The notes under the pieces were generated by a model. It was not told where the DNA came from. It saw nothing but the letters and a program-made list of their open reading frames with translations, and made no database searches. From positions 1 through 64,000 of IMG/VR virus record IMGVR_UViG_3300027668_000008: a stretch of 64,000 nt of DNA; one strand, 5' to 3'. Shown in pieces: positions 789 to 25,111 of this stretch (within the stretch, counting starts at the first letter, position 1; each line of letters begins with the position of its first letter). Both the position numbers and the translations under genes were made by a program.

Positions 789-797
789 CCGGTTATT

Positions 798-1187: not shown

Positions 1188-1218
1188 ATAATATTAACCT
1201 CCTTATGAACAGGTAGTA

Positions 1219-6726: not shown

Positions 6727-6986
6727 TGAGTATGATTTCTCCATGTATCAGCATATGTAGATGGGATCCAGTAACCAGTAACTGTTACGGATGTGGTCGT
6801 ACTGTTGCAGAGAAAATGATATGGAAAGACCAGGATACCACAGACGAGTGGAAAGAAAACAATTTAAAAGAGTGCATGGAAAGATTATCAGGGTGGCAAT
6901 TAGAAAGTTTCAAGGAATCATATCAGCATAAGATTAAATACGGTATATCCTTGTTTAAAAAAGAAATGAAGAAGAAACAACTTTAA
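6726..6986 (+). CDS. DUF1289-like small putative Fe-S protein
   Basis: SPCISIC..CYGCGRT..E..W signature. Confidence 0.8.
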   Translation: MSMISPCISICRWDPVTSNCYGCGRTVAEKMIWKDQDTTDEWKENNLKECMERLSGWQLESFKESYQHKIKYGISLFKKEMKKKQL

Positions 6987-11918: not shown

Positions 11919-13401
11919 AGATCCAGAACATTACGAACAGAGTATAAAAGATAAAGGTTGTTCAGGCTTTTGTCCTATACCCTGGGTTAGTCTAGGAGTT
12001 AATAACAACGGTGACTATCGTATGTGTGTTCAAGCCGCGGCTAATAGAAAAAATAACATCAGAGGACAATGTAAAGGCCCTGACGGTGTTACTATGCGTA
12101 TCGAAGACACTAGCATTGCCGATAGTCGTAACAGCGAAGTAATGAAAGAAACAAGACGTGATATGATTGCAGGCAAGAGAAGTGATCATTGCGTTCGTTG
12201 TAACAGAGAAGATGATGCTGGTAGTAACAGCCGACGTTGGCTTGACTTAAAGAAGTATTGGCAAGAGTTTGACATCGACGATGCAATAGAGAATACAGCC
12301 AAAGATGGTAGCATAGACACAGAGGAATATCCATTATTAGACTTAGACTTACGTTTAGATAACACTTGTAACTTGAAGTGTCGTATGTGTGGGCCTACTG
12401 AGAGTCATCAATGGTACACTGAATGGATGAAGACAACAGGATACAAAAAGTTTAAAGCGTATGACCACACTGTTAATTTAGAAATGCAAGGTAGCCGAGC
12501 TAAAATAGTTGGTAAGAGTCCATATGGCTGGAGCGACAGAATCGATGTTGCAGAGATACTTCAGAAAGATGCACCTCACTTAAAACAAATATATATGAGT
12601 GGAGGCGAACCTTTAATCATTAATCAACAGTACGAAGTATTACAACAGTATATCGATAATGGTACTGCAAAAGACTTAGAGATCGATTACAATACAAACT
12701 TTACAAGTATTCCACAACGTGCATTAGATCAATGGAAACACTTTAGACAGGTTAACATTGGTGGAAGTGTAGACGGTATCGATAAAGTAAACGACTACGT
12801 TAGGTATCCAAGTAAGTGGACACAGATAAAAGAGAACATAACAAAATTAGATACCCAAACAGAAGATAATGTAACGTGTTGGTTAACATACACCTGGCAA
12901 ATATTAAATGTGTTAAGTGTTACAGACATTATAGAGTATTGTTTAGAGCAAGACTTTGTTAAGTTTAATCGATATAGTCAAAGTGCTTTCTTTACATATC
13001 ACCCTGTGCATAATCCTGCATATTATTGTGTAACTAGTCTGCCAGACCCTGCAAAAGAGTATGTAACAAAGTATATAACTGATTGGATGAATGGTTGGTT
13101 TAAAGAATGGTGTGATAGTAAGCCTAGAGACTATAAAATGTCTAACAGTAATTATGAAATGAGAAACCATGGTAAGATTACAAGAGATTGGGACAATGGC
13201 CCTGATGCTTTATATGAAATCACTTGCAAACAATTGAATAGTATGTTACAATTTATGAATGCACGAAGTACAGTAGAGGAACTACCTGAAATGTGGAGAC
13301 GTACACGCATTTTAGATGAAAGTAGAGGAGAAAACTTTGAAGAAGTTTATCCTGAACTTGCAGTTCATATTAAAAAACACTTAGGCATTAGTAATGATTA
13401 A
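11890..13401 (+). CDS. Radical SAM enzyme, N-terminal twitch (class A, #7)
   Basis: FCPIPW..MC..CVRC; CNLKCRMC; SGGEP; DESR. Confidence 0.9.
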   Translation: MKHFDRTHYKDPEHYEQSIKDKGCSGFCPIPWVSLGVNNNGDYRMCVQAAANRKNNIRGQCKGPDGVTMRIEDTSIADSRNSEVMKETRRDMIAGKRSDHCVRCNREDDAGSNSRRWLDLKKYWQEFDIDDAIENTAKDGSIDTEEYPLLDLDLRLDNTCNLKCRMCGPTESHQWYTEWMKTTGYKKFKAYDHTVNLEMQGSRAKIVGKSPYGWSDRIDVAEILQKDAPHLKQIYMSGGEPLIINQQYEVLQQYIDNGTAKDLEIDYNTNFTSIPQRALDQWKHFRQVNIGGSVDGIDKVNDYVRYPSKWTQIKENITKLDTQTEDNVTCWLTYTWQILNVLSVTDIIEYCLEQDFVKFNRYSQSAFFTYHPVHNPAYYCVTSLPDPAKEYVTKYITDWMNGWFKEWCDSKPRDYKMSNSNYEMRNHGKITRDWDNGPDALYEITCKQLNSMLQFMNARSTVEELPEMWRRTRILDESRGENFEEVYPELAVHIKKHLGISND

Positions 13402-14488
13402 ATTACAAGATTTAGAATCAATACAATTAGAAATTACAAGTAATTGTAATGCCATGTGTTTAGATTGTGCTAGAAACATTGATGGAGTAAAACTTAATCC
13501 ATATGTAGAGTTTGGTAAAGCAGGAAACATGAGCTTTGAATTATTTAAAAGTATACTTAACAAAAAGACATTACCTAACTTTAAGAAGTTAGAACTAGAT
13601 GGTAACTTTGGTGATAGTTTAATACACCCACAGAGTTACGAGTTTATGGAATACTATTGTAATGAGTTTCCAGGAACTAATATCGAGATTAATTCTAATG
13701 GATCTTATAATGACACAGACTGGTGGTATAAGTTAGGAAAGTTATTATCCACACATCTTAATAGGAGACCGGAGCATATTAAGTTTGGTATAGATGGAGT
13801 AGACTTTGAAACACACGGAATATATAGACGTAACTTAGATTACAATAAAATTATAGATAACGCAACAGCATTTATGGCAGGTGGAGGTGTTGCTACATGG
13901 AAGTTTTTAGAGTTCGACCATAATACACATCAAGTTGAACAAGCAAGACAACTAGCAAAAGAATTAGGATTTCAAAGATTTTATTTGAAAGCAACAAGGA
14001 ATAAAACAAGAGTAATTGAAGAAACTTTAGATAATAAATCTTATAAGGTAACTGGACAAGCAACAAAGAAAAAAGAACATATTGAAATAGATTCAATGGA
14101 TAAGGCTACAAGAAATGTTTTAGAAACTCATATAAAAAGTATTGTAAGTGATACTGAAAACTTTTATGATACAAGTACAGTCCGTTGTCCATGGCAAAGA
14201 CGTAAGATGATACAAATAGACTACGATGGTAGAATATATCAATGTTGTCATATTGGTGGAAAATATGGTAGAACAAAGAACTTTAAACATAAAGAGTATC
14301 AATATTACATTGACAAATATGGCATCGATTGGAATAACTTAAATATACATACAATACAAGAAGTTTTTGATCATCCATACTGGAAAGACCTCGACGAAAG
14401 TTTTAACAACAGTATACATGATAAATCAAATCCAAGAATTAAAAGATGCGTTGAAAAATGTTCAGCGGAATTATGGAGTAATGCATGA
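13394..14488 (+). CDS. Radical SAM enzyme, C-terminal SPASM (class B, #8)
   Basis: CNAMCLDC; GNFGDS; CPW..YQCC..CVEKC. Confidence 0.9.
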   Translation: MIKLQDLESIQLEITSNCNAMCLDCARNIDGVKLNPYVEFGKAGNMSFELFKSILNKKTLPNFKKLELDGNFGDSLIHPQSYEFMEYYCNEFPGTNIEINSNGSYNDTDWWYKLGKLLSTHLNRRPEHIKFGIDGVDFETHGIYRRNLDYNKIIDNATAFMAGGGVATWKFLEFDHNTHQVEQARQLAKELGFQRFYLKATRNKTRVIEETLDNKSYKVTGQATKKKEHIEIDSMDKATRNVLETHIKSIVSDTENFYDTSTVRCPWQRRKMIQIDYDGRIYQCCHIGGKYGRTKNFKHKEYQYYIDKYGIDWNNLNIHTIQEVFDHPYWKDLDESFNNSIHDKSNPRIKRCVEKCSAELWSNA

Positions 14489-15813
14489 GTAAAACATTTT
14501 GTCCAATACCTTGGAACTTTCAGGCTATTAGAAATAATGGCGACATTCGTATTTGCTGTCAAGCAAACGTAACAAAGAATCAAGGTGTAGTTAGACATAA
14601 AGACGGCACTCCGTATAATGCAGGTAAGCATAGTATGAAGCAGGCTCGTAATGCAGACTTAATGAAAGCAGTTCGAAAGAATATGCTTGAAGGTAAGTGG
14701 AGCGACGAATGTACTCGTTGTAAGCAAGAAGAAGACGTAGGACTTAACAGTAGACGTCAATACGAATTGCAAACATGGAAAGAATTTGATATACGACAAG
14801 CACAAGTGTTGACATCAGAAGATGGAACTATTGATACTAGCAATTCTCCTGTTGTTTATTATGATTTACGGTTTGGTAACTTATGCAATCTACAATGTAG
14901 AATGTGTGGACCAACAGATAGTCATAGTTGGTATGAACAGTGGACAGACTATCATAAAGAAGATGGCTTCCAAGACACACATGGTTATGTTAAACTTGAA
15001 CGTAATGCAAAAGGTAGGCTAGACACTGATGATTATAGTTGGCATGGCTCTACTAGTTTTTGGAATAACATTGAAAAGAATTTAGATAATATTCGACACG
15101 TTTATATGGCAGGCGGCGAACCTATGATGATCGAAAGACATTACGAGTTCCTAGAGAAGTGTGTAAAGAAAGGTGTTGCTAAGAATATATTAATTGAATA
15201 CAATACTAACATGACAGCATTGCCTGATAGAGTATTAGAGTATTGGAAACATTTTAAAGAAGTAAGAGTTGGTGCTAGTATAGATGGTATGGGCAAAGTA
15301 CTAGAGTATCAACGTTATCCAATTAAATGGGAACAAGCAAAGAAGAATTTAGATAAGTTAGATAAGTTCTGCCAAGAGAACAGCAACGTAATGGCATGGA
15401 TCGCTTATACAGTAACAGTAAACAATATATGGCACTTGCCGGAGTTTATGTTATGGAAAGTTAATGCTAGTGGGTGGAAGAAGATTAATAGTACATTAAA
15501 GAGACCTGTTATAACTCACCATGTTGCACATGGACCCAGACGTGCTAACATTAGGTTACTTCCTGAGGATATGAAAGACGAATTAGAATTATTTTATACA
15601 GGTTGGAAGAAGATTTTCGAAGGAGAGTTTACTGATTTACAGACAGAAAAGGCTTGCAAAATACTAGATAGTGTGTTACAATATTGTAAATCAGAAGATT
15701 ACTCTGATGCATTACCTGAGTTTAAGAAGTTTACAAAGTATTTAGACATATCAAGAAACCAAAGTATACTCGATGTTGCTCCTAGATACAAACGATTGTT
15801 CGACAATGATTAA
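14485..15813 (+). CDS. Radical SAM enzyme, N-terminal twitch (class A, #9)
   Basis: FCPIPW..ICC..CTRC; CNLQCRMC; AGGEP; DISR. Confidence 0.9.
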   Translation: MSKTFCPIPWNFQAIRNNGDIRICCQANVTKNQGVVRHKDGTPYNAGKHSMKQARNADLMKAVRKNMLEGKWSDECTRCKQEEDVGLNSRRQYELQTWKEFDIRQAQVLTSEDGTIDTSNSPVVYYDLRFGNLCNLQCRMCGPTDSHSWYEQWTDYHKEDGFQDTHGYVKLERNAKGRLDTDDYSWHGSTSFWNNIEKNLDNIRHVYMAGGEPMMIERHYEFLEKCVKKGVAKNILIEYNTNMTALPDRVLEYWKHFKEVRVGASIDGMGKVLEYQRYPIKWEQAKKNLDKLDKFCQENSNVMAWIAYTVTVNNIWHLPEFMLWKVNASGWKKINSTLKRPVITHHVAHGPRRANIRLLPEDMKDELELFYTGWKKIFEGEFTDLQTEKACKILDSVLQYCKSEDYSDALPEFKKFTKYLDISRNQSILDVAPRYKRLFDND

Positions 15814-16525
15814 AGAAGGATACGAAGGACTTAACAATTCAGTATATTTGGAAGGTGGGTTTAGAATACAAATAGAATCCAGCACAAGATGTAACTGCTT
15901 ATGTCCTGGTTGCTCTAGAACAAAGACTAAAGCAAAGTATGATGCAGGTGAGAGTGAACTTATGTATCCTATTATGGATATGAGTTTAGATAATTTTAAA
16001 CTGTTAGTTCGTCCTGAGAATAATATTAAACGTATAACATATAGTCTTACATTAGGAGATCCTATATACAGTGGATCGTTTTTAGAACAAGTGCATTACT
16101 TAAATACTTTAGATAAACGTCCTTGGATTAATTTACATACTAACGGCAGTGGTCGTTCTAAAGATTGGTGGAGTAAACTAGGTAAACTACTACGAGGTAG
16201 AGATAGAGTTGAGTTTACTATTGATGGACTAGAAGATACAAATAAGATTTATAGAATTAACTCAAAGTGGAATACAGTTATAGATGGCTTTAAGGCTTTA
16301 AAGACGAGTATAAATGAAATAGATAGTGATGCTGAAGTAGATGTAAGACATCTTATATTCGAACACAACTATCACCAAACACTAGATGTTTGTAAACTCG
16401 CACAAGACTTAAAGGCAAACACGTTGCGTATATTTGTTGGAGATGGCAGAACACCAGAACATATGAGATTAAAGAGTAAACAGTGGAACGACATTAAAGG
16501 AGAGATAGATGCCTATTTACCCTAA
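15806..16525 (+). CDS. Radical SAM core only (class B, #10; SPASM domain in the next ORF)
   Basis: CNCLCPGC; TLGDP; FTIDG. Likely ATG at 15806, overlapping the previous stop (the track starts at 15773). Confidence 0.85.
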   Translation: MIKEGYEGLNNSVYLEGGFRIQIESSTRCNCLCPGCSRTKTKAKYDAGESELMYPIMDMSLDNFKLLVRPENNIKRITYSLTLGDPIYSGSFLEQVHYLNTLDKRPWINLHTNGSGRSKDWWSKLGKLLRGRDRVEFTIDGLEDTNKIYRINSKWNTVIDGFKALKTSINEIDSDAEVDVRHLIFEHNYHQTLDVCKLAQDLKANTLRIFVGDGRTPEHMRLKSKQWNDIKGEIDAYLP

Positions 16526-16859
16526 ATGTAAATACAGAGATGACCAGCCACCTATCCTAAGAGTAGATGGATATGTTGGACCTTGTTGTCACTTCGGCGG
16601 CGAGTCTCCGTGGTTCGACTTAAAAAATTTACTTGGAGATAAAATAGAACAACTGCATATCTCAAACGGCACAATGGATGAAATTAATCGTAGTGAAGCA
16701 AGTTACATGATAGAACAAAGTTTTACAGATGCTCCAATGGATAGTTGTAAACAAATGTGTGGCAAACCGTTCTTACAAACAAGTAAGGAAGGCGGCTTCT
16801 CTACAGCAAACGACAGAGTAATGATTAAAAACTTAATAAAAAGTAGATTAGATGACTGA
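16509..16859 (+). CDS. Stand-alone SPASM/twitch Fe-S domain protein
   Basis: CKY..RVDGYVGPCCHF..CKQMC matches the C-termini of the class B enzymes; AAGGAG RBS upstream. Confidence 0.8.
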   Translation: MPIYPKCKYRDDQPPILRVDGYVGPCCHFGGESPWFDLKNLLGDKIEQLHISNGTMDEINRSEASYMIEQSFTDAPMDSCKQMCGKPFLQTSKEGGFSTANDRVMIKNLIKSRLDD

Positions 16860-17958
16860 TTTAAAAACAAGTGAATATGACTTTAGTGCTATACCCTTTG
16901 ACGATTTAGTTAGTGTTGGGCAACGTACTTTACTTCATAGAGATATTTTTACAGTTAGTTGGCTACTAGGAAGATTTTGTAACTACAAATGTTCTTATTG
17001 TTGGCCCTATGCTCGTAGTGATAGAAAAGACCATAGACCTACGGAACTATGTCTATCAACTATTGACGAAATTAAGAGACAGGCAAGAGACAATGGCTTT
17101 AATAGTTTTCATTTTAGTTTAAGTGGAGGCGAGCCAACTTTTCATCCTGGTTACTTAGATATTTTAAAACATTTAAGTGACGATGCTCACAATACAAACT
17201 ACACAAGTGTACACATGACTAGTAATTGTAGTCGTAACATGAAGTGGTTTGAAACGTATGTCGATTACGCAAGTAAGTTTCACCGTGCTAGTATTACTTG
17301 TAGTCTACACGTTGAACACGTCGACACACCTGAGAAAATGCAGGACCTTGCAAACAAACTTATACTATGTCAAGAACATGATGTACAAGTAACTATTAAT
17401 ATGGTTATGGTTCCAGAAGTATTTGACAAGTATTATGAGAATGCATTGTTCTTTCATAATCAGAACATTAACGTAACTTTAAAGCCTATGAGTGATCCAA
17501 CTGCAAGTAGAGTCGTTGATGGTTATACAGAGGAAATGAAGCAAAAACTGTATAATGATATGCCACAACGTGCATATACTGAGATTAAAAATAAATACGT
17601 TAGTAGACCAAAGCCCAATTGGAAGCCTTTACCAGAAATGAAATTGGACAATGGAACAGTACCTCAGCATTTTCAAGTAGAGTTTGAAGATAATAAAGGC
17701 AAGAAATGGTACATGGATCAAGCAGAACGCTTTAATGCGTTTAATTTTAATAAATTTACTGGTTGGCAATGCAATGCAGGGTTCCAAGGAATTATAATAA
17801 GAGAACCAGACGGCTCAATTAAGAGAAGTTATAGTTGCAGTGACAGTCCACTAGGAAATATCGAAACAGGGTTTAAGTTATTTAATAAACCGATGCCTTG
17901 TATTTCAAACTCGTGTGTATCTAGTGCAGACAGTAAGATTCCAAAAAGGAAAGAATGA
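16852..17958 (+). CDS. Radical SAM enzyme with C-terminal Cys cluster (third type, #11)
   Basis: CNYKCSYC; SGGEP; WQCNAG..SYSC..C..SCVS. Confidence 0.9.
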   Translation: MTDLKTSEYDFSAIPFDDLVSVGQRTLLHRDIFTVSWLLGRFCNYKCSYCWPYARSDRKDHRPTELCLSTIDEIKRQARDNGFNSFHFSLSGGEPTFHPGYLDILKHLSDDAHNTNYTSVHMTSNCSRNMKWFETYVDYASKFHRASITCSLHVEHVDTPEKMQDLANKLILCQEHDVQVTINMVMVPEVFDKYYENALFFHNQNINVTLKPMSDPTASRVVDGYTEEMKQKLYNDMPQRAYTEIKNKYVSRPKPNWKPLPEMKLDNGTVPQHFQVEFEDNKGKKWYMDQAERFNAFNFNKFTGWQCNAGFQGIIIREPDGSIKRSYSCSDSPLGNIETGFKLFNKPMPCISNSCVSSADSKIPKRKE

Positions 17959-18134
17959 GTAACAACGACGACAAACGAAAACAAAGAGATCCGAAAGGAA
18001 TATTCGCGGGAATGGACGACGAATCGTTTAGTAAGTTAACTAAAACTTACGGAACAAATCCATCAAGTAAACGCCCGATCAATCAACAGAGTAAAAAACA
18101 TGACAGACAAAACAAAAGAAGAAATAATAGTTGA
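17955..18134 (+). CDS. 59-aa basic hydrophilic peptide (MSNNDDKRKQ...), not in the ORF track
   Basis: ATG overlaps the stop of rSAM #11 (ATGA); open to TGA at 18132-18134. Confidence 0.45.
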   Translation: MSNNDDKRKQRDPKGIFAGMDDESFSKLTKTYGTNPSSKRPINQQSKKHDRQNKRRNNS

Positions 18135-18468
18135 GATTAAAAAAGTTGTAGAAGAATATGTACAACCTAATGTAGCACAACATGGTGGAACTGTTACACT
18201 CGAAGACTTTGATATGGAAACTGGACAAGCAACAATGCTAATGAGCGGAAGTTGTTCAGGCTGTGCAAGTAGTATGATGACACTTAAAATGGGTGTTGAG
18301 AATATGCTTAAACATTACATACAAGAAGTTAAAAGTGTAGTCGGTGTAGATGATCCCGCTTTCAATAATCCTTATTATACCAATGCAGAATTTTATGATG
18401 ATTGGCGTGAGGAAGACTTTTTCGAACAAGGTGAGACACAGGTGTTAAATGATCCAATCAAAAATTAA
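18100..18468 (+). CDS. nfuA: NifU/NfuA C-terminal-domain Fe-S carrier
   Basis: V.P.VAQHGG.V....; GSCSGCASS (CxxC); TLK.GVE..L. Confidence 0.85.
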   Translation: MTDKTKEEIIVEIKKVVEEYVQPNVAQHGGTVTLEDFDMETGQATMLMSGSCSGCASSMMTLKMGVENMLKHYIQEVKSVVGVDDPAFNNPYYTNAEFYDDWREEDFFEQGETQVLNDPIKN

Positions 18469-18850
18469 GACTTGGGCAGACGACTTATCCATGTTAGAAG
18501 GACACGAAAGATTATCTTATCTTGTTGACCTTGCTCGACGAGCAACAACCCTCCCTAGTGAATTGCGAACTGATGAAAGATTAGTCCCAGGATGTATTAG
18601 TAAGATTTGGGTCGAAGTAGGACTGAAAGAAGATGGTATAAACATTTATTACGACAGTGATGCTTTAATCCCTAAAGGAATAACAACAATAGTTTGTGAT
18701 ATCTTTACAGGTAGCAATAAAGAAGAAGCACTCAGTATGAAAATGGAAGACCTAGAACCTCTGGGCTTCACACAATTAGTTACACCACAGAGACGTAATG
18801 GTCTCTACAATCTAATCGGAGTAATACAAAGCAAGATAGAAAGACTATAA
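18449..18850 (+). CDS. sufE: SufE-family sulfur acceptor
   Basis: VPGCISKIW with the conserved Cys; DSDALIPKG; TPQRRNGL. Confidence 0.85.
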   Translation: MIQSKIKTWADDLSMLEGHERLSYLVDLARRATTLPSELRTDERLVPGCISKIWVEVGLKEDGINIYYDSDALIPKGITTIVCDIFTGSNKEEALSMKMEDLEPLGFTQLVTPQRRNGLYNLIGVIQSKIERL

Positions 18851-18853
18851 ATT

Positions 18854-18949
18854 ATGATCACGCACTATAGTAGAGATGAAAATAGAGATAGTACCAAGAC
18901 AGAAACTTGCGACAATACGCTATTCAAAGCAACACCCAACACTCACTAA
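18854..18949 (+). CDS. 31-aa peptide (MITHYSRDENRDSTKTETCDNTLFKATPNTH), not in the ORF track
   Basis: Exactly fills the gap from the sufE stop to the next ATG (TAATG overlap). Confidence 0.35.
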   Translation: MITHYSRDENRDSTKTETCDNTLFKATPNTH

Positions 18950-19503
18950 TGTTTCAAATTAAAGAATTAACACCAGAGATGGATTTAAGCCTAAGTAACT
19001 TCTGTAAGAAGTGTGAAGGACTTGGGTATATGAACAATACATTCTCAGCAATGAAATACGAATGGCTACGCCAACAAGGCGGTATATGGCATTGTGTTTC
19101 TCATGGTGGATTAGAAGCAGGGTATGGAGACATATTAAGTTTGGCAGGATGCCACCCATTGCCTGAAGTAAACGAAAACGCCTGGAGAGTTATGTTTAGA
19201 GGCGTACAGATTCCTGGTAACTATGGACTAGGGTTAAGCAAGTATCATATGAATGCTTTAACTTGGAGATACATATTACCTAAACAAATAGAATTTATAG
19301 GTGAAGACAAAGACATCTATATTACTACTAACATGAACAATGATGCTAGTGGGAAAATGAATAAGACACACAGATTGTTCCAACGTTTAAAAGTGTTGGG
19401 TATGGTAGAACATCATAATGATATGGAGTTATACTTTACAAGACAAAGTGTGTGGAAACTAAACAAAGAGAAGTACATGGAGGTACGAGCTAATGTGGTT
19501 TAA
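18949..19503 (+). CDS. GNAT-like (acyltransferase-fold) protein
   Basis: beta-strand pattern LSLAGCHP..WRVMFRGVQ..GLSK; likely ATG at 18949. Confidence 0.4.
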   Translation: MFQIKELTPEMDLSLSNFCKKCEGLGYMNNTFSAMKYEWLRQQGGIWHCVSHGGLEAGYGDILSLAGCHPLPEVNENAWRVMFRGVQIPGNYGLGLSKYHMNALTWRYILPKQIEFIGEDKDIYITTNMNNDASGKMNKTHRLFQRLKVLGMVEHHNDMELYFTRQSVWKLNKEKYMEVRANVV

Positions 19504-19795
19504 TTGGAATCATCTAAGAGAAGCAGAAAAACATGGTGGCAATAAAGGTACAAATGGGATAGTGTTATATTTTAAACACGCCAGAGTAAGTTTAATTGAA
19601 GCATGGAGTTTGTTTGTATTATGTATAGCAAGTATCCTACACGCAATCTGTCCACCCTTATTCGACTTTAAGTTATTAGAATTAAGATTAAAATATGACG
19701 AGAAGTTATACGACTTTGTCCCTACGCATAAAGCGTGGGATAGTTTAAGAACAAAGATCAACAAAGAAAACAACAAACAAAAAACAAAGGAATAA
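19493..19795 (+). CDS. Small hypothetical membrane-associated protein (DUF6356-like)
   Basis: HL.E....Y..H motif; hydrophobic segment ending ILHAICPP. Confidence 0.45.
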   Translation: MWFNWNHLREAEKHGGNKGTNGIVLYFKHARVSLIEAWSLFVLCIASILHAICPPLFDFKLLELRLKYDEKLYDFVPTHKAWDSLRTKINKENNKQKTKE

Positions 19796-20005
19796 ATGAC
19801 AACAATAACAGGAAAAGTAAAATGGTTCGATGGCGTTAAAGGCTACGGATTTATTGAAAGAGACGACAAAGAAAAGGATGTATTTGTACATTCTTCAGCA
19901 GTAAGAAGTTCAGGAATGGACGGACTAAATGAAGGCGATACATTATCGTTTGAGGTTGAAGAAGGTCAACGAGGATCATCGGCAGTAAACCTACAAAAAG
20001 CATAA
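19796..20005 (+). CDS. cspA: Cold-shock protein (CSD)
   Basis: [20 protein letters not shown]. Confidence 0.95.
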
Positions 20006-20017
20006 AAAGAGTGACGA

Positions 20018-20728
20018 ATGGAAATCAACAAGTTACAAGATATTATCAACGAGGGTACGACTATATGTTCTAGCGGAACAACAGGCAAACCTAAACCTAT
20101 AGAACAAACAGTTGCTAAACTAAAAGCAGGTGACGAAGCCGCTATAGACAGTCAGCGACTTACAAGCAAGTCTAAAGTTTATACAGTGTGTAAGACTACA
20201 CACGCCGGCGGACTACTTGCACAAAGTTTACCAGCAATTCGTTTAGGAGCCGAAGTTGTATTTGATGACTTTAATCCATATCGTTGGGTTAAAGAAGTAC
20301 ACAAGTACACGCATACACACATCATACCTGCACATGGCGAAGCAATTATGAAAACAAAGGGCTTTAAGGACATGGACTTATCCAATGTTTGGATAACTTG
20401 TGGCAGTGACATTGTTCCATGGCATCTTATTAAGGCGTTTGTTAACAGAGGTGCAACGTTTATGTGTAACTGGGGAATGACAGAAGTAGGTCCTTGTGCA
20501 ATCAATACAGTATTTGGAAGTTTAGGCAAGATAGAAGAATATGAAAGCAAAGTGGATCTAAAGGGATCAATGCCTGTACTAGGTGATAGATTCTACTGTG
20601 ATTACCAAATAAGTGAATGGAACGAGTTATCTGTTAAAGGCAATATCTGTGTGTATGATGATTGGTTTAAAACAGGTGACTTAGTCGAACAACATAAGAA
20701 CGTATTATTTTATAATGGCAGAAAATAA
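20018..20728 (+). CDS. Truncated ANL-superfamily adenylating enzyme (AMP-binding core)
   Basis: SSGTTGKPK (A3), WGMTEVG (A5), FKTGDL (A7), ends at GRK (A8). Confidence 0.75.
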   Translation: MEINKLQDIINEGTTICSSGTTGKPKPIEQTVAKLKAGDEAAIDSQRLTSKSKVYTVCKTTHAGGLLAQSLPAIRLGAEVVFDDFNPYRWVKEVHKYTHTHIIPAHGEAIMKTKGFKDMDLSNVWITCGSDIVPWHLIKAFVNRGATFMCNWGMTEVGPCAINTVFGSLGKIEEYESKVDLKGSMPVLGDRFYCDYQISEWNELSVKGNICVYDDWFKTGDLVEQHKNVLFYNGRK

Positions 20729-21434
20729 CCTAATTGTAATAAGTGCTCCAATGGGAGCAAAAGGACATCAAATTGGCAGACTATTGGCTAGTTGCGATAA
20801 TGTTGAATGGTATAATCATAGTGCTAATGGCACAGAACCATGGAAGCCTTATAGGGAAAATCATCTCCATGGTACTGATAACAATTTTACTATATATCAT
20901 TGGAATAGACGCTTTAATGGCTCTAAAGGACATGGTTTAGACGAATATACTGTTCCCCCTGTACTTGATATGGCGAACAGACAAACACAGCGTACGGGCA
21001 AATATGAGCCCATAAACGACTGGAAACAACGTGTGTCTCCCTCTAATTTAATGTATGCATTACATGGACCTTTGGATAAAACTAAAGAGTTTTTTGGTCC
21101 TGCTAAACACATTGTAGTTATACCTAAAGATATGTCTAGACTACTTGCAAGGTTCTGTCAAACAAGTGCCAAGTATTATGTTGATCCAGAGAATCCAGAT
21201 AAAACATTCTTTGATTTATATGAGGGAAATTATATGAATATGCTTGAACATTTAGAACGTGTAGTAGACAACTACAGTCGTAATGTTACAGAAGAGGATG
21301 TCATAATAACAGACCCGGATAAGTTTTTTGTTGAAGAAAACTTCCAAAAGGTCTGTGATAAGTTTAATTTAACTTTTAATGATGATAACTTTGATAAAGT
21401 TATTAAGTTTATTCGAAACCCATGGTTGCTATAA
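20715..21434 (+). CDS. Hypothetical protein, P-loop/sulfotransferase-like N-terminus
   Basis: VISAPMGAKGHQIGRLL resembles the PAPS-binding loop. Confidence 0.4.
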   Translation: MAENNLIVISAPMGAKGHQIGRLLASCDNVEWYNHSANGTEPWKPYRENHLHGTDNNFTIYHWNRRFNGSKGHGLDEYTVPPVLDMANRQTQRTGKYEPINDWKQRVSPSNLMYALHGPLDKTKEFFGPAKHIVVIPKDMSRLLARFCQTSAKYYVDPENPDKTFFDLYEGNYMNMLEHLERVVDNYSRNVTEEDVIITDPDKFFVEENFQKVCDKFNLTFNDDNFDKVIKFIRNPWLL

Positions 21435-22146
21435 ACGTATCTAGTTTCTGATTACTAACCATCATAGAATAACCATCTTCGTTTTTAAGTTCTAACTTTT
21501 TAGAATCCAATGTTAACGGAACACCTTCGACCATTCTAATATACTTTTTAATTATACTATCGTCTGTGTCGACATTAAAGACATTCTTCCAATAGCCTTC
21601 ATTACATACATTCATAGTTAATTTGTTTTCATGAATAAACATTAGATTGTGTCTATTCTCATGGGCCATTGCTTTAATCATTGTTTCTTTGTTAGTGTAT
21701 CCTTCTTTGTATCTAGGATACGGAATATCAAACCCACCTGCCCCAAACCAACCTTCCTCGCACTTTTCATCTGATCTATAAACAATAACAAACTTACTGT
21801 TTGGGAACATCTTATAGATTTTAGGTAAGTCGATACTAAATTGATGACACTTGATAATTTTGTATCCGTCGTTGGTAGTGATCCATGCTCTTTCAATCTC
21901 TTCGAATATCTCTTTCTTAGATAAGCGATCCAATGCATCGAAACTATCACCGAATGGAAAACCTGGACCAAAATAACTACCACGATGTGGGATAATATCG
22001 GGATCGTTGTAGTGTGCGTACTGTCTATCTTCAGCATAGTCTCCGGTATCGAATAGATACTTTTTACTTTGTGCCATTATGTGTGCAACTGCACTCCATT
22101 TACTACCAGGTGCACCTGTAAAAAATACTAGTTTACTTTCGTCCAT
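21409..22146 (-). CDS. P-loop/sulfotransferase-like protein (paralog 1)
   Basis: FFTGAPGSKWS; H.G.YFGP; IIKCH; clear paralog of 23064-23933. Confidence 0.5.
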   Translation of the reverse strand: MDESKLVFFTGAPGSKWSAVAHIMAQSKKYLFDTGDYAEDRQYAHYNDPDIIPHRGSYFGPGFPFGDSFDALDRLSKKEIFEEIERAWITTNDGYKIIKCHQFSIDLPKIYKMFPNSKFVIVYRSDEKCEEGWFGAGGFDIPYPRYKEGYTNKETMIKAMAHENRHNLMFIHENKLTMNVCNEGYWKNVFNVDTDDSIIKKYIRMVEGVPLTLDSKKLELKNEDGYSMMVSNQKLDTFIATMGFE

Positions 22147-22562
22147 TATAAGTCCTCTAAATCTTGTAAGTGTGTATCTAATGCTTTAGTGGCGAATTGC
22201 AATTCAACTGCATATAATAATATTGCTAATCCAAATATAACTAAACTACTTGTAAACAATAAACTGAATATAGAAAATGACTTAATAAAAGCAAAGTACA
22301 TAGCAAATAAGTTGCATATAAATGCAAATGCCGCCAATGTTGATGTTGCCCTATTAAGTCCTAAACGTTTTCGTAGTACAGTTATTTGTTTTAAGTATCT
22401 ATTTGTTGCTTTATCCTTTTTACTTAACTTCTTAGACATTAGTTCGTCGTGTATCTTACGAATTAATGTAGCCAAAGATGTATAACGGTTACCAAAAGAT
22501 ATCATCATTAAGGGTATTGCCGGAAATAAAGCGGCAGGTAATAGTAGTACTGAGTCCATCAT
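22146..22562 (-). CDS. DUF2721-like membrane protein
   Basis: PAIPL.MISFGNRY..LA..IR..H; R.LKQI..LRKR; three hydrophobic segments; likely start 22562. Confidence 0.7.
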   Translation of the reverse strand: MMDSVLLLPAALFPAIPLMMISFGNRYTSLATLIRKIHDELMSKKLSKKDKATNRYLKQITVLRKRLGLNRATSTLAAFAFICNLFAMYFAFIKSFSIFSLLFTSSLVIFGLAILLYAVELQFATKALDTHLQDLEDL

Positions 22563-22645
22563 GTTCCTTATAATATTTGTGTTACGACAAGAACTATGAT
22601 AACAGAAAAAATAAACAACCAACCCTTTTCAGGTAGTTCTTTCAT

Positions 22646-23062
22646 TTACTTGATCTCATAATAATTGCCTGTTTTTTCTTGCTCAGGATTCTTTCCTTGA
22701 TAATCCAACACTGCGGCTTTGATGGCATCTTCTGCCAACACACTACAGTGAATCTTTACTGGAGGCAATGCAAGTTCGGTAGCAAGTTCAGTATTTGTAA
22801 TCTTACCTGCTTGTCCTAACGACATTCCTTTTACCATTGTAGTTAATAAACTACTGCTGGCAATAGCACTACCGCATCCATATGTTTTAAATTTAGCATC
22901 TTCTATGATGCCATTCTTATCAACTTTAATTTGCAAACGCATTACATCACCACAAGCAGGTGCTCCCACCATTCCTGTTCCAATGCTTCCGTCTGTGTCA
23001 TCGAACCTACCTACATTACGAGGGTTTTCGTAATGGTCCATCACCTTATCTGAATATGCCAT
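22646..23062 (-). CDS. iscU: Fe-S scaffold IscU
   Basis: MAYSDKVMDHYENPRNVG; APACGD; GCGSAIASS; LPPVKIHCS. Confidence 0.97.
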   Translation of the reverse strand: MAYSDKVMDHYENPRNVGRFDDTDGSIGTGMVGAPACGDVMRLQIKVDKNGIIEDAKFKTYGCGSAIASSSLLTTMVKGMSLGQAGKITNTELATELALPPVKIHCSVLAEDAIKAAVLDYQGKNPEQEKTGNYYEIK

Positions 23063-23063
23063 G

Positions 23064-23933
23064 TTATTTTCGTCCGTATTTGTTAATTACTTTTACGGTA
23101 GAATCTATTAAGTTTTGATTAATAATATGATCGGTATACTCTACATCTGGATTGTATACCATTGTCATGGTTGCTTTAGTACGATCGTCTAACATATGTT
23201 TCGTATAAGCATCTCTACCTTCTGAAGTATCCAAATCCCAATCACCATCACCTAATTGCTCTGCTAGTGTTTGAATCTTTGGATCTCTATCCCATACATC
23301 TGTGTAACTTACCTGGCCAGGGTCTAAACCTAAGTCAGTATGCAAGTCAGCGAGTGACTTGTATCGTTTAAATTTTGCTCCGGTCTCTGCCGCAAACTTT
23401 ATTGAACACGCATTTTCTATTTTGATTTGTTGTAACATACGTTCATTTGTTTCATACCAATCGTAGTGCGGGTATTCAATGTCAAACCCTCCTACAACTT
23501 GCCACCATCTTAAACATAGTTCGTCAGGTAGATAGTATGCAATAATCTTTGCCTTAGGAAAGCATTTCTTTAAATGGTCAAGTCCGTATGCAAACCAATG
23601 ACTTTTTACAATCTTGATTCCGGTTTCCCAATCACTAAATGCTTTCTTAAATTCTAATAATAATTCTTCTTTTGTCCATGCTTCTAAATTGTCAAACGTT
23701 TTACCAAACTCATGACACGGGCCAAAGTATACACCACGATGCCAACCAATGCCTGCTTTCTTACCATCTTCATATGATGCAGTACGTTCGTATGTACGGT
23801 CATCTGTTTGGTCTGAAAGGTTAATGTCTGGATGACTTGTAATCGATTGGATACTTGCACTCCATCTTGTACCAGGAGCACCTGTAATGATTATAAGGTC
23901 TTCACCTTGGTAATTATCTATTCCATTCTGCAT
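23064..23933 (-). CDS. P-loop/sulfotransferase-like protein (paralog 2)
   Basis: IITGAPGTRWS; HRGVYFGP; IVKSH; W..VGGFDI.YP.Y shared with 21409-22146. Confidence 0.5.
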   Translation of the reverse strand: MQNGIDNYQGEDLIIITGAPGTRWSASIQSITSHPDINLSDQTDDRTYERTASYEDGKKAGIGWHRGVYFGPCHEFGKTFDNLEAWTKEELLLEFKKAFSDWETGIKIVKSHWFAYGLDHLKKCFPKAKIIAYYLPDELCLRWWQVVGGFDIEYPHYDWYETNERMLQQIKIENACSIKFAAETGAKFKRYKSLADLHTDLGLDPGQVSYTDVWDRDPKIQTLAEQLGDGDWDLDTSEGRDAYTKHMLDDRTKATMTMVYNPDVEYTDHIINQNLIDSTVKVINKYGRK

Positions 23934-24441
23934 AAATTCTTCTCTTATTCGGTTCTGGTATCTCTGTACCTAGTTCAACTAATTCAAAACCGTAGTCTCT
24001 ACAAAACGTTTCATGCCATTGTTCGCTCCAATGAAAGAACGGTACTTTATGTGTATTTGGCTTGCCATGGTCACTTCGACCAGGATTGCAACGCCAAAAA
24101 ATCTTACAACTTGGTTTCATGTGGGTAAGAAGTTTTTCAATTTGATTACGAATCTTTTTGTCGTCTCCAAAGTTAATACTTCCTAAACAAAATGCTACAT
24201 CGAATAACTTATCCGATTCAAACTCTTCTAAAGTTACAACTTGATCTGCTTTTGTATTAGCAGGGTCAATGGCTACTAAATTTTTAATGGAACCTTTAAA
24301 CGGATTGAATCCACAGCCTACGTCTAATACCCAATCTCTTTTACGACATTTGTGTACTAAATCATATCCCGACAATGCATACTTATCAAATTCTTCTGTC
24401 CATTCTGTAGAGAAATATTTGTTGAGTTCTTCCTGGTTCAT
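23914..24441 (-). CDS. Class I SAM-dependent methyltransferase
   Basis: VLDVGCG; FDVAFCLGS. Confidence 0.8.
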   Translation of the reverse strand: MNQEELNKYFSTEWTEEFDKYALSGYDLVHKCRKRDWVLDVGCGFNPFKGSIKNLVAIDPANTKADQVVTLEEFESDKLFDVAFCLGSINFGDDKKIRNQIEKLLTHMKPSCKIFWRCNPGRSDHGKPNTHKVPFFHWSEQWHETFCRDYGFELVELGTEIPEPNKRRIYAEWNR

Positions 24442-24442
24442 C

Positions 24443-25111
24443 TTAAGTATTTATTTCATTTATCAAAGGAAATATGTTAGCAATAACTTTCGCACAAGCG
24501 ATAGCGACTTCCATGTGTTCCTTTTGTGTTCCGTTAGCACTACGCAATTCAATGTAGTGAACCCACGAACGTAAACTACCGTTCATATATAATGTTGTCT
24601 TTGTAAGTCCTTCGGGTAATACCTTACGAGCTTGTTCTTTAGCAATGCCTTTTTCAATAGCATTCTCATATGCAACCTTTGAAACTTCTGCAACGTGCTT
24701 TTGTTGTGAGTCCCACCAATGTTGTAAATCTCTGTCATCAGTAGCAATACTGTTTTGTCTATTCTTTGTGTCTTGTAAACGTGCTTCACTGTACTCAAAG
24801 ATATCTCCTTGTGCTTTAGGATCAGCATAACGTTGACTAAATTCTTGGAATGAAAAACTACGGTGCCTTACAATTTGATGTGCAATATCCCTAGTTGTTT
24901 TGATTTCTAAACAAGCACTAACCATTTCTAATGGTGACCAATGCTTATGTTTAATCAAATACTTGATAAGTTTCTCATTTGTTTCTTTATTCATTTGTCC
25001 TGCAGGATTACTTACCCTGGCACAAAAGGCAATGAGGTCTTGTACACTGTCTAATTCTGTGTACTCTTTTACAGGATTACTGTAACTTATCATCTTAACT
25101 TCGGCTGTCAT
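24443..25111 (-). CDS. thyX: Flavin-dependent thymidylate synthase
   Basis: RHRSFSFQEFSQRY; H.SPLE; KEQAR..LP; LR.....Q.EH. Confidence 0.97.
   Translation of the reverse strand: MTAEVKMISYSNPVKEYTELDSVQDLIAFCARVSNPAGQMNKETNEKLIKYLIKHKHWSPLEMVSACLEIKTTRDIAHQIVRHRSFSFQEFSQRYADPKAQGDIFEYSEARLQDTKNRQNSIATDDRDLQHWWDSQQKHVAEVSKVAYENAIEKGIAKEQARKVLPEGLTKTTLYMNGSLRSWVHYIELRSANGTQKEHMEVAIACAKVIANIFPLINEINT

What the first reader, a model, noticed from the sequence alone, without database searches (positions are those of the whole stretch)
18100..23062. The phage carries its own Fe-S supply kit next to the rSAM array
Seen: NfuA/NifU-C (18100) and SufE (18449) directly follow the last rSAM, IscU (22646, intact ligands and LPPVK) lies in the convergent operon, a DUF1289-like protein sits in the array, and a peroxiredoxin is at 58643. 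Established: these are the scaffold, carrier and sulfur-transfer parts of ISC/SUF, and each SPASM enzyme needs 2-3 clusters. Inference: cluster supply limits this pathway, so the array is likely expressed and important. Mixing ISC and SUF components in one viral locus is unusual.
Basis: partly seen in the sequence, partly recalled or inferred. Interest (0 to 1): 0.7.

Follow-up and report, generated by a model that had tools for sequence, protein, structure and literature searches.

The report
Jumbo phage carries partial Fe-S kit
A 307-kb marine phage carries real but incomplete iron-sulfur cluster assembly genes (Nfu, SufE, IscU and others) next to its 15-gene radical-SAM array; similar phage gene sets are already published, and related phages often have the array or the Fe-S genes without the other.

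Summary
Nfu (18100-18468), SufE (18449-18850), IscU (22646-23062, ligands and LPPVK intact), DUF1289 (6726-6986) and a peroxiredoxin (58643-59194) all pass family models. The record is a circular ~306.5-kb T4-like marine phage. Its radical-SAM array runs across the record ends (15 genes, plus a 16th elsewhere).

Three corrections:
- "NfuA" is a single-domain Nfu.
- Most array enzymes are N-terminal-twitch radical SAMs (two clusters each), not SPASM.
- A second module (A-type carrier, DUF59/SufT-like, 2Fe-2S ferredoxin) lies at 104.7-105.8 kb beside the 16th radical SAM. A glutaredoxin is also present.

No cysteine desulfurase, HscB or SufBD was found, so the phage depends on host enzymes.

Nfu-SufE directly follows the last array gene in three lineages and is under purifying selection. 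IscU is a separate unit, absent from a sister lineage.

Across phages the link is optional. Only 6 of 43 array-bearing contigs hold any of five Fe-S assembly families tested, and a 93%-complete 330-kb relative with 16 radical SAMs has none. Half of the large Nfu-bearing contigs carry arrays, but most IscU-bearing contigs do not.

Similar gene sets are published (PMC5332604, PMC8940887).

The parts
1219..17958 (+). Window part of the radical-SAM array. Eleven CX3CX2C ORFs start at 1219, 2911, 4487, 7693, 8756, 10761, 11890, 13394, 14485, 15773 and 16852. The array continues across the record ends to 290528-305052.
   Evidence: PF04055 matches. The CX3CX2C motif is in all eleven. Seven of ten tested pass NF033640 N_Twi_rSAM. 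Invariant Cys in alignment A1 are C6, C24, C76, C79 plus C134/C138/C141, which fits two clusters per enzyme. Contig L158 bridges the end and start of the record.
6726..6986 (+). DUF1289 small Cys-rich protein inside the array
   Evidence: PF06945, 41.6-42 bits against a cut-off of 27
17955..18134 (+). Small basic ORF (59 aa) between the last radical SAM and Nfu. Its start overlaps the radical-SAM stop (ATGA). Whether it is a real gene is uncertain.
   Evidence: A 54-aa ORF sits at the same position in L318. The sequence is poorly conserved: 39% identity to L095, dN/dS 0.23.
18100..18468 (+). Single-domain Nfu (NifU C-terminal type) Fe-S carrier with a CXXC motif and an acidic C-terminal tail of about 40 aa
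   Evidence: PF01106 78.1 bits. Aligns to the mouse and human NFU1 C-domain structures 1veh and 2m5o. dN/dS 0.17-0.20. A metatranscriptome contig spans 17635-18431.
18449..18850 (+). SufE-family sulfur acceptor. Overlaps the Nfu 3' end by 20 nt.
   Evidence: PF02657 95.5 bits. The Cys aligns with E. coli SufE. dN/dS 0.11-0.12. Homologues at 62% identity or more lie mostly on metagenome contigs of up to 310 kb; those inspected are phage-like. The next hit is at 29%.
18907..21434 (+). Conserved downstream genes of the same strand block: unknown protein (weak GNAT-like lead), DUF6356-like protein, cold-shock protein (19796-20005), AMP-binding fragment (20018-20728), and a sulfotransferase-like protein (20715-21434)
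   Evidence: Synteny is kept in L095 and L318. Homologues also sit beside a DUF59-Nfu-A-type-carrier group in L120.
21409..22622 (-). Last two genes of the minus-strand block: an unknown 245-aa protein and DUF2721. Their 3' end overlaps the plus-strand block by 26 nt.
   Evidence: DUF2721 was not found in L095.
22646..23062 (-). IscU scaffold, with intact Cys/Asp/His ligands and the LPPVK motif
   Evidence: TIGR01999 211.2 bits against 192.4; phrog_8429 136.7 bits; residues read from the translation. Present in L095 at 68% identity but absent from the syntenic stretch of L318. RNA contigs cover 22881-23063.
23064..25111 (-). Genes upstream of IscU on the minus strand: a sulfotransferase-like 289-aa protein, an unknown 175-aa protein, and ThyX (24443-25111)
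   Evidence: PF02511 149 bits for ThyX. The sulfotransferase assignment is an Atlas lead only.
58643..59194 (-). Peroxiredoxin (Redoxin/AhpC-TSA family), 36 kb from the Fe-S genes
   Evidence: It is 67 genes from the nearest radical SAM. Nfu-Prx are adjacent gene pairs in other phage contigs (L112, L115 and L116 inspected), and C48C1 has IscU with a Prx 7 kb away.

Best explanation
The phage carries auxiliary genes that add Fe-S cluster building and delivery capacity to the host's own ISC/SUF machinery during infection. It does not encode a self-sufficient pathway.

The most likely sequence of steps is as follows.
1. A host cysteine desulfurase (SufS/CsdA type, possibly IscS) makes persulfide sulfur. 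This is inferred; no desulfurase was found in the phage genome.
2. The phage SufE takes the sulfur on its conserved Cys and stimulates the desulfurase. This is inferred from family membership and the conserved Cys.
3. Clusters are built on the phage IscU, using host HscA/HscB through the intact LPPVK motif. This is inferred.
4. The single-domain Nfu, and the A-type carrier, DUF59 protein and ferredoxin encoded at 104.7-105.8 kb, deliver [4Fe-4S] clusters to apo-proteins. The main phage-encoded clients are the 16 radical-SAM enzymes, most needing two clusters each.

Established knowledge supports step 4: Nfu-type carriers (E. coli NfuA, human NFU1) serve radical-SAM enzymes such as lipoyl synthase and MiaB.

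Nfu-SufE is the part tied to the array by gene order and by conserved synteny. IscU is a separate, lineage-specific addition set among nucleotide-metabolism genes. It probably serves Fe-S demand more generally.
For: - Family membership and catalytic residues.
- Tight packing of rSAM11, the small ORF, Nfu and SufE with overlapping stop and start codons and no terminator-like site between them.
- The same order in L095 (80-83% identity) and L318 (66-71%).
- Nfu sits inside the array in L121/L122, and beside DUF59 within about 5-7 kb of array-type radical SAMs in L152/L155.
- Purifying selection on Nfu and SufE.
- A second module (A-type carrier, DUF59, ferredoxin) lies three genes from the lone SPASM radical SAM.
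- Non-random gene-order proximity, P about 0.003-0.005.
- Of 18 Nfu-bearing contigs of 40 kb or more, 9 carry 4-18 radical SAMs.
- RNA contigs at 99-100% identity cover the Nfu, SufE and IscU genes, while 20.6-22.0 kb and the array interior are nearly empty. That pattern argues against plain DNA carry-over.
- No PF00266, HscB or SufBD match in a genome shown to be circular.
- Docking of phage SufE on E. coli SufS got weak support. The score was 0.59, the best of 3 controls was 0.00, runs agreed in 100% of contacts, and partner pLDDT was 84. The mark was reached by 51 of 78 solved complexes and 2 of 108 mismatched pairs. Scores of 0.60 or under were seen in only 5 of those 78 solved complexes and in all 4 mismatches that passed. 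The pass may also reflect memory of solved SufS-SufE complexes.
- Published precedent: PMC5332604, section 14.
Against: - Most array-bearing relatives lack all five Fe-S assembly families tested (37 of 43). These include a 93%-complete 330-kb genome with 16 radical SAMs. The array therefore works on the host supply alone.
- Radical-SAM count does not correlate with Fe-S gene presence.
- IscU, Nfu and SufE also occur in phage contigs with no radical SAM. Examples are near-complete 43-50 kb phages with Nfu, 29 of 40 IscU contigs, and C48C1.
- In the RNA runs the array interior is almost uncovered while the Fe-S region is covered, so co-expression is not shown. The runs were chosen with the Fe-S stretch as query, which biases this comparison.
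- The host is unknown. If it lacks a SufS/CsdA-type desulfurase, the SufE partner is unclear.
- Most contigs used are fragments (2-39% complete), so absences are weak evidence taken one at a time.
Confidence: 0.6

Rival explanations
1. These are general Fe-S homeostasis genes. They keep host and phage Fe-S proteins as a whole supplied under iron scarcity or oxidative stress in surface seawater. Examples of such clients are nucleotide-metabolism, replication and repair enzymes. On this view there is no specific tie to the array, and the position next to it reflects mosaic gene insertion at the boundary where the two strand blocks meet.
For: - Fe-S genes and arrays occur largely independently across phages.
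- IscU lies among ThyX and other nucleotide-metabolism genes here, and beside DnaB in C48C1.
- A sister lineage that keeps the flanking genes has no IscU in the syntenic stretch and carries SHMT nearby.
- The glutaredoxin and peroxiredoxin are far from any radical SAM.
- Adjacent Nfu-Prx pairs in other phages point to a link with oxidative stress.
- Published interpretations favour stress and iron limitation (PMC8940887).
Against: - Both multi-gene Fe-S modules of this genome abut radical-SAM genes.
- The array-Nfu-SufE order persists to 66-71% amino-acid identity.
- Nfu is found inside or beside arrays in other lineages.
- Half of the large Nfu contigs carry arrays, although this sample is biased toward relatives of this phage.
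Confidence: 0.27
2. Nfu and SufE are a repair or sulfur-donor module for radical-SAM chemistry that consumes sulfur. The auxiliary cluster of some array enzymes would be sacrificed as a sulfur source, as in LipA, BioB and MiaB. SufE and Nfu would then rebuild it each turnover, rather than raising overall cluster supply.
For: - Established knowledge: E. coli NfuA regenerates the sacrificial auxiliary cluster of LipA.
- Nfu-SufE lies directly at the end of the array.
- The N-twitch enzymes have one auxiliary cluster site.
- The neighbourhood carries sulfur-related leads, namely sulfotransferase-like proteins.
Against: - There is no evidence that any array enzyme inserts sulfur. None matches the LipA, BioB or MiaB models.
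- Most arrays in relatives lack Nfu and SufE.
- The sulfotransferase assignments are leads only.
Confidence: 0.1
3. The genes are recently captured host genes with no role for the phage: passenger DNA or an assembly chimera.
For: IscU is 78-81% identical to marine gammaproteobacterial IscU.
Against: - Independent contigs from other samples carry the same locus at 99.9% identity.
- Synteny is conserved at 66-83% amino-acid identity with dN/dS of 0.1-0.2.
- SufE homologues at 62% identity or more form their own group on metagenome contigs of up to 310 kb, and the next hit is at 29%.
- RNA contigs match the region.
- No host isc or suf operon neighbours are present.
Confidence: 0.03

Closest known systems
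T4-like marine environmental viral genomes with Fe-S assembly genes plus many radical SAMs (Nishimura et al. 2017, PMC5332604; for example TARA_ERS488813_N000010, 183 kb, with an A-type carrier, 12 radical SAMs, cas4, grx and paaD)
   Same: Both are T4-like marine phages. Both combine an A-type carrier or IscU with a dozen or more radical-SAM genes, a glutaredoxin and a PaaD/DUF59-type protein. The same inference was drawn there: viral assembly proteins serve virally encoded Fe-S proteins. The patchy distribution among close relatives is also shared.
   Different: This genome is larger (about 306.5 kb). It adds Nfu and SufE, which that paper does not report, and a 2Fe-2S ferredoxin. Nfu-SufE sits directly at the 3' end of the array. 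I did not compare the sequences directly, because that genome is not among the loci fetched.
Virome-level Fe-S auxiliary genes: sufE without sufS, and nifU (Jurgensen et al. 2021, PMC8940887); sufA and iscU in photic-zone viromes (cited in PMC5332604)
   Same: Viral sufE occurs without a desulfurase, and NifU-type genes are viral.
   Different: Those reports give gene counts in viromes, without genome context. Here the genes are placed in one circular genome and in conserved synteny with a radical-SAM array.
Bacterial ISC system (iscRSUA-hscBA-fdx) and SUF system (sufABCDSE)
   Same: The IscU passes the TIGR01999 cut-off with all ligands and LPPVK. The SufE has the acceptor Cys. An A-type carrier and a 2Fe-2S ferredoxin are also present.
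   Different: IscS/SufS, HscB and SufBD were not found. The genes are scattered in three places on both strands. The SufE scores far below the SufE and CsdE equivalog cut-offs. This is a set of accessory parts, not either system.
E. coli NfuA / human NFU1 (late-acting [4Fe-4S] carriers serving radical-SAM clients)
   Same: The Nfu domain has the CXXC motif. It aligns to the NFU1 C-domain structures. It is positioned next to radical-SAM client genes.
   Different: It lacks the N-terminal A-type domain of NfuA and the N-domain of NFU1. It has an acidic C-terminal tail of about 40 aa, in which Pfam and NCBIfam matched nothing. It fails the TIGR03341 cut-off.
Phage C48C1 (Kyanoviridae, 156 kb, OQ984149.1)
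   Same: Its IscU is 80% identical, and a peroxiredoxin lies 7 kb away. Nucleotide-sugar enzymes are nearby.
   Different: It has only one radical SAM in the whole genome, far from IscU. No Nfu or SufE was found in GenBank phage records, including this one.

Membership tests
IscU scaffold (TIGR01999 / PF01592) | Score at or above the curated equivalog cut-off | tested here: met
   TIGR01999 211.2 bits against 192.4; PF01592 176.5 bits against 22
IscU scaffold (TIGR01999 / PF01592) | Three Cys ligands, the conserved Asp and His, and the LPPVK HscA-binding motif | tested here: met
   C37, D39, C63, H105, C106 and LPPVK, read from the translation
Complete ISC system | Cysteine desulfurase IscS and co-chaperone HscB encoded together with IscU | tested here: not met
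   No PF00266 or PF07743 match in the circular genome
SufE family (PF02657) | Pfam gathering score and the conserved persulfide-acceptor Cys | tested here: met
   95.5 bits against 27. The Cys in VPGCISKIW aligns with GCQSQVW of E. coli SufE structure 1mzg.
SufE or CsdE proper (NF006792, TIGR03391) | Equivalog cut-off | tested here: not met
   60.4 bits against 160, and 43.5 against 136.4. It is a divergent group; the next homologue outside it is at 29% identity.
SufE family (PF02657) | Works with a SufS/CsdA-type desulfurase | tested here: inconclusive
   No desulfurase was found in the phage. Predicted docking on E. coli SufS got weak support: 0.59 against a best control of 0.00, with runs agreeing in 100% of contacts and partner pLDDT 84. 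The pass may come from memory of solved complexes. The host is unknown.
Complete SUF system | SufB/SufD scaffold and SufS present | tested here: not met
   No PF01458 or PF00266 match
NfuA (TIGR03341 / NF008392) | Two-domain architecture (N-terminal A-type domain plus C-terminal Nfu domain) and the equivalog cut-off | tested here: not met
   51.1 bits against 269. Only model positions 106-181 of 190 are matched, and the protein is 122 aa.
Nfu / NifU C-terminal domain (PF01106) | Gathering score and the CXXC cluster-binding motif | tested here: met
   78.1 bits against 27. CSGC is present. It aligns to the NFU1 C-domain.
N-terminal twitch radical SAM (NF033640), the array enzymes | Subfamily cut-off, CX3CX2C motif and N-terminal Cys cluster | tested here: met
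   Seven of ten tested score 241-367 bits against 170. C6, C24, C76, C79 and C134/C138/C141 are invariant in eight paralogues. Three others score below the cut-off.
Phage Fe-S auxiliary metabolic genes (phrog_8429; PMC5332604) | A phage-encoded Fe-S assembly protein in a bona fide phage genome | tested here: met
   IscU matches phrog_8429 at 136.7 bits. The genome has a T4-type polymerase, tail-fibre and protease PHROG families, and it is circular. PHROGs v4 has no family for the SufE and only unnamed families for the Nfu.
   Of 43 array contigs, 6 carry any of the five families tested. Of 18 large Nfu contigs, 9 carry arrays. Of 40 IscU contigs, 4 have three or more radical SAMs. Copy number does not correlate. 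The samples are fragments and are not phylogenetically independent.

The most novel reading that the evidence does not exclude
The Nfu-SufE pair, with its conserved small-ORF spacer and the acidic tail on Nfu, may be a dedicated maturation or regeneration module that co-evolved with the N-terminal-twitch radical-SAM array. The array itself would be part of an ~80-kb strand block. That block also holds UDP-sugar dehydrogenases, a carbamoyltransferase, sulfotransferase-like proteins and a RuBisCO-like protein, and would make an unknown, heavily tailored glycan or nucleotide-sugar product. On this reading the phage brings both a novel radical-SAM pathway and its own cofactor-loading machinery.
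Probability: 0.2. Interest if true: 0.65.

Novelty: new member of a known kind. Interest (0 to 1): 0.36.

Why it matters
The finding gives a concrete, circular genome in which to test whether viral Fe-S genes serve the virus's own Fe-S enzymes or the host in general. That question has been open since Fe-S genes were first counted in viromes.

The conserved order (array, then Nfu, then SufE) points to a specific experimental pair: phage Nfu and an N-twitch radical SAM. The comparative data here also correct an over-reading. Arrays of 5-25 radical SAMs are widespread in this phage group, and most have no phage Fe-S genes on the same contig. A phage-borne cluster supply is therefore an optional boost, not a requirement.

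The concept itself is already published, so the advance is incremental.

Tried and rejected
- A profile of eight N-twitch paralogues could not be used to scan viral contigs, because it had no conserved stretch. A single paralogue was used instead.
- An IscU tree of 164 sequences was too poorly resolved to say anything. It had 128 columns and 69 of 150 forks were open. It could not show whether the window and L095 IscU genes (68% identical, against 82% for the neighbouring gene) were acquired separately, or which bacterium was the donor.
- The promoter and terminator scan found no more sites than shuffled sequence and no clear signal between the array and Nfu. It only shows that no obvious terminator is there.
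- The first tblastn pass on loci of plus or minus 10 kb suggested that the 72%-identity SufE contigs lack radical SAMs. Whole-contig searches found 2-3 radical SAMs elsewhere in three of four of them. Another 71% lineage (L318) has the full array-Nfu-SufE order. The plus or minus 10 kb count therefore understates the linkage.
- I considered that the record might be incomplete, since CheckV gives 87%, and that a desulfurase might have been missed. An independent contig joins the end to the start, and the ends share a 160-bp repeat at 97.5% identity, so the record is effectively whole.
- One Pfam call failed on a wrong glutaredoxin frame. The glutaredoxin rests alone.
- The peroxiredoxin as part of a local kit is rejected for this genome on position. 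It stays plausible as a functional associate, because Nfu-Prx pairs occur in other phages.

Full report
**What the sequence is.** The window is the first 64 kb of a 306,714-bp IMG/VR virus record. It has a T4-type family-B polymerase (phrog_262, 645 bits), tail-fibre, protease, exonuclease and HNH families, and about 35% G+C. Its nearest cultured relatives by polymerase are jumbo phages: Phosso, Atu_ph07, Vibrio 2.275.O and the 350-kb E. coli phages, at 41-49% identity. An independent contig from another sample (L158, 99.9% identical) runs from 293,631 through the end of the record into positions 1-7,503. The first and last 160 bp of the record are 97.5% identical. The record is therefore a circular or circularly permuted genome of about 306.5 kb. 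Absences within it are meaningful despite CheckV's 87% completeness estimate.

**Checking the observation.**
- Nfu lies at 18100-18468 (PF01106, 78 bits). Its CXXC motif reads CSGC, and it aligns to the mouse and human NFU1 C-domain structures.
- SufE lies at 18449-18850 (PF02657, 95.5 bits). Its Cys aligns with the persulfide-acceptor motif of E. coli SufE.
- IscU lies at 22646-23062 on the minus strand. It passes even the NCBIfam equivalog cut-off (211 against 192 bits). C37, D39, C63, H105, C106 and LPPVK can be read directly from the translation.
- DUF1289 lies at 6726-6986, inside the array.
- The peroxiredoxin lies at 58643-59194.

Three points need correcting.
- The Nfu is a 122-aa single-domain protein. 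It is not NfuA: TIGR03341 scores 51 bits against a cut-off of 269, and there is no A-type N-domain.
- Seven of ten array enzymes tested belong to NCBIfam NF033640, the "twitch domain-containing radical SAM" family. Eight paralogues share invariant C6, C24, C76, C79 plus the CX3CX2C motif. That fits one auxiliary cluster and so two clusters per enzyme, rather than the 2-3 of SPASM enzymes.
- SPASM matches are weak and confined to a few ORFs.

**The array and the full Fe-S gene set.** The genome has 16 ORFs with CX3CX2C. Eleven lie at 1219-17958 and four at 290,528-305,052. Because the genome is circular these form one array of about 34 kb. It lies at the 3' end of a plus-strand block of about 79 kb that starts near 249 kb. 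One more radical SAM lies at 106,743-107,756.

It holds an A-type carrier (104,766-105,191), a DUF59 SufT/PaaD-like protein (105,136-105,609) and a 2Fe-2S ferredoxin (105,555-105,842). This module lies three genes from the lone SPASM radical SAM. A glutaredoxin lies near 152.7 kb. No cysteine desulfurase (PF00266), HscB or SufBD was found. The phage therefore carries carriers, a scaffold, a sulfur acceptor and an electron carrier. It must take sulfur mobilisation and chaperones from the host.

**Local anatomy.**
- The stop codon of the last array gene overlaps the start of a 59-aa basic ORF (ATGA).
- That small ORF overlaps the Nfu start by 35 nt.
- Nfu and SufE overlap by 20 nt.
- No terminator-like site lies between these genes.
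- The plus-strand block goes on through five conserved genes: an unknown protein, a DUF6356-like protein, a cold-shock protein, an AMP-binding fragment and a sulfotransferase-like protein.
- At 21,409-21,434 it meets the 3' end of the large minus-strand block.
- IscU is the third gene from the end of that block. It lies downstream of ThyX and two unknown genes.
- IscU is thus in a different transcription unit, in a nucleotide-metabolism setting.

A permutation of the three Fe-S modules over the 400 ORFs puts them as close to radical-SAM genes as observed with P of about 0.003-0.005. The glutaredoxin and peroxiredoxin are 81 and 67 genes away, so they show no positional link.

**Relatives.**
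- The array-Nfu-SufE order, and the genes that follow it, are kept in L095/G042. There Nfu is 80% and SufE 83% identical, and IscU is present at 68%.
- The order is also kept in L318 and similar ENA contigs, where Nfu is 66% and SufE 71% identical.
- L318 has no IscU in the syntenic stretch. An SHMT gene sits between the homologues of the two genes upstream. IscU therefore looks like a lineage-specific addition.
- In L121/L122, Nfu (70% identical) sits inside an array.
- In L152/L155, Nfu and DUF59 sit within about 5-7 kb of array-type radical SAMs.
- In L120, DUF59, Nfu and an A-type carrier sit near homologues of the unknown downstream genes.
- dN/dS is 0.17-0.20 for Nfu and 0.11-0.12 for SufE. 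dS is near saturation, so these values are rough.
- SufE homologues at 62% identity or more lie mostly on metagenome contigs of up to 310 kb; those inspected are phage-like. The next hit is at 29%.
- IscU is 78-81% identical to IscU of marine Gammaproteobacteria such as HTCC2080, Luminiphilus, Porticoccus and Motiliproteus. This hints at the host group. The IscU tree is too unresolved to go further.

*Forward direction.* I took 43 viral contigs of 30 kb or more that carry a homologue of one array enzyme at 61-100% identity. All hold 5-25 PF04055 genes, with a median of 13. Few carry Fe-S assembly genes:

| Family | Contigs with it (of 43) |
|---|---|
| Nfu | 2 |
| SufE | 2 |
| IscU | 4 |
| A-type carrier | 3 |
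| DUF59 | 0 |
| Any of the five | 6 |

The only near-complete member (G055, 330 kb, 93% complete, 16 radical SAMs) has none of them. Contigs with Fe-S genes do not have more radical SAMs: the medians are 11.5 and 13, Mann-Whitney p = 0.25.

*Reverse direction.*
- Of 18 Nfu-bearing contigs of 40 kb or more, 9 carry 4-18 radical SAMs and 9 carry none. The nine without include two near-complete phages of 43-50 kb.
- Of 40 IscU-bearing contigs, 29 have no radical SAM and 4 have three or more.
- The complete Kyanoviridae phage C48C1 has an 80%-identical IscU beside DnaB, and a single distant radical SAM.

*Caveats.* Most contigs are fragments, and the sets are biased toward relatives of this phage.

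*Conclusion.* The link is real for Nfu-SufE in this lineage and recurs elsewhere. It is optional in both directions.

**Expression.** In four marine metatranscriptome assemblies, contigs at 99-100% identity cover several parts of the region:
- the 3' end of the last radical SAM;
- the Nfu-SufE junction;
- the downstream genes;
- DUF2721;
- the 5' part of IscU.

One 797-nt contig spans 17,635-18,431, from the last radical SAM through the small ORF into Nfu. The stretch 20.6-22.0 kb has zero depth. The array interior (11.0-17.0 kb) yields only one or two short contigs per run. The unevenness argues for RNA rather than carried-over DNA. These are unstranded assemblies from runs picked with the Fe-S stretch as query, so they cannot rank expression. 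They show only that the Fe-S genes are probably transcribed in the sea. They do not show that the array is.

**Mechanism.** The best-supported reading is that the phage adds late-acting and sulfur-relay capacity to the host ISC/SUF machinery.
1. SufE receives persulfide from a host type-II desulfurase. Docking on E. coli SufS got only weak support: 0.59 against a best control of 0.00, with runs agreeing in 100% of contacts and partner pLDDT 84. The pass may reflect memory of solved complexes.
2. IscU scaffolds the cluster, with host HscAB.
3. Nfu, the A-type carrier and DUF59 deliver [4Fe-4S] clusters. The ferredoxin provides electrons.

It is established that Nfu-type carriers serve radical-SAM clients: NfuA with LipA and MiaB, NFU1 with lipoyl synthase. 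That makes Nfu at the end of an array sensible. What is shown here is family membership, intact residues, gene order, conservation, purifying selection and probable transcription. Every transfer step is inferred.

The main rival, with confidence 0.27, is that these are general Fe-S homeostasis or stress genes. The independent distributions, the setting of IscU and the Nfu-Prx pairs in other phages support it. A minor rival is regeneration of sacrificial auxiliary clusters. Passenger DNA is disfavoured by the conservation and selection data.

**Comparison with what is known.**
- Nishimura et al. 2017 (PMC5332604, section 14) described T4-like marine viral genomes with A-type carrier and/or IscU genes. 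One 183-kb genome there has an A-type carrier, 12 radical SAMs, cas4, grx and paaD. They drew the same inference, and noted that close relatives lack the genes.
- Jurgensen et al. 2021 (PMC8940887) reported viral sufE without sufS, and nifU, in oxygen-minimum-zone viromes.
- PHROGs lists a phage NifU-like family as an auxiliary metabolic gene, and the IscU here matches it.

Several things are new:
- the particular combination of Nfu, SufE, IscU, A-type carrier, DUF59, ferredoxin and glutaredoxin in one circular jumbo genome;
- the conserved placement of Nfu-SufE at the end of the array;
- the finding that SufE and Nfu are nearly absent from GenBank phage records: 2, 0 and 17 of 50,697 records for SufE, Nfu and IscU respectively.

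**Verdict.** This is a new member of a known kind, of moderate to low interest. It is a useful, testable example, and it comes with a clear negative result on obligatory coupling.

Noticed in passing
G000 288530-289666 (+), = L082:1816-2952, outside the window: A RuBisCO large-chain-like protein (PF00016, 122 bits) is encoded in the same plus-strand block as the radical-SAM array. RuBisCO-like proteins appear uncommon in phages (my recollection, not checked here).
   Followed up: no
G000 283237-300450 (+), outside the window: The array's strand block also holds two UDP-glucose/GDP-mannose dehydrogenase-family ORFs, a NodU/CmcH-type carbamoyltransferase, DUF6071 and a run of 235-290-aa ORFs. 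This suggests sugar or nucleotide-sugar tailoring rather than peptide (RiPP) modification.
   Followed up: partly
window 20715-21434 (+) and 23064-23933 (-): Two unknown proteins flanking the Fe-S genes look sulfotransferase-like by language-model features. For 20715-21434 there is also a predicted-structure match (TM 0.6). These are leads only.
   Followed up: partly
G000 104766-107756 (-), outside the window: A second compact Fe-S module (A-type carrier, DUF59/SufT-like protein, 2Fe-2S ferredoxin) lies three genes from a lone SPASM radical SAM.
   Followed up: yes
record ends: window 1-160 and G000 306555-306714: The two ends share a 160-bp repeat at 97.5% identity, and an independent contig (L158) bridges them. 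The record labelled linear and 87% complete is effectively a complete circular assembly.
   Followed up: yes
L318:14340-15479 (-) against window 22646-23062: A sister lineage has no IscU in the syntenic stretch and carries SHMT between the homologues of the two upstream genes, next to ThyX. This slot takes different inserted metabolic genes in different lineages.
   Followed up: partly
L112:6334-7166, L115:10061-10893, L116:10061-10891: In another phage lineage Nfu is followed about 90 nt later, on the same strand, by a peroxiredoxin that is 53% identical to the window's. One of these contigs (G084, 107 kb) has 10 radical SAMs 35 kb or more away.
   Followed up: partly
window 15773-16525 and 16509-16859 (+): A 250-aa radical-SAM core and a 116-aa Cys-rich ORF with a weak SPASM match are separate overlapping ORFs. 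The same two-ORF split is seen in L095. It may be a genuinely split enzyme or a conserved frameshift.
   Followed up: no
window 17955-18134 (+): A 59-aa, very basic ORF is wedged between the last radical SAM and Nfu. Its position is conserved (54 aa in L318) but its sequence is not (39% identity to L095). It could be a spacer, a small protein or an artefact.
   Followed up: partly
window 11000-16990 against 17200-23150: In the same marine metatranscriptome assemblies the array interior is nearly uncovered, while the Nfu-SufE to cold-shock region and the DUF2721-IscU region are covered. The cold-shock gene has the highest depth, though this may include cross-mapping from other organisms.
   Followed up: partly
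G000 259518-272054 (+), outside the window: A single 4178-aa ORF lies upstream of the array in the same strand block. It was not annotated here.
   Followed up: no
viral contigs G045, G046, G064, G069 (loci L166, L167, L203, L208): Some related phage contigs of 37-77 kb hold 20-25 radical-SAM genes, more than this genome, with none of the five Fe-S assembly families tested on the same contig.
   Followed up: partly
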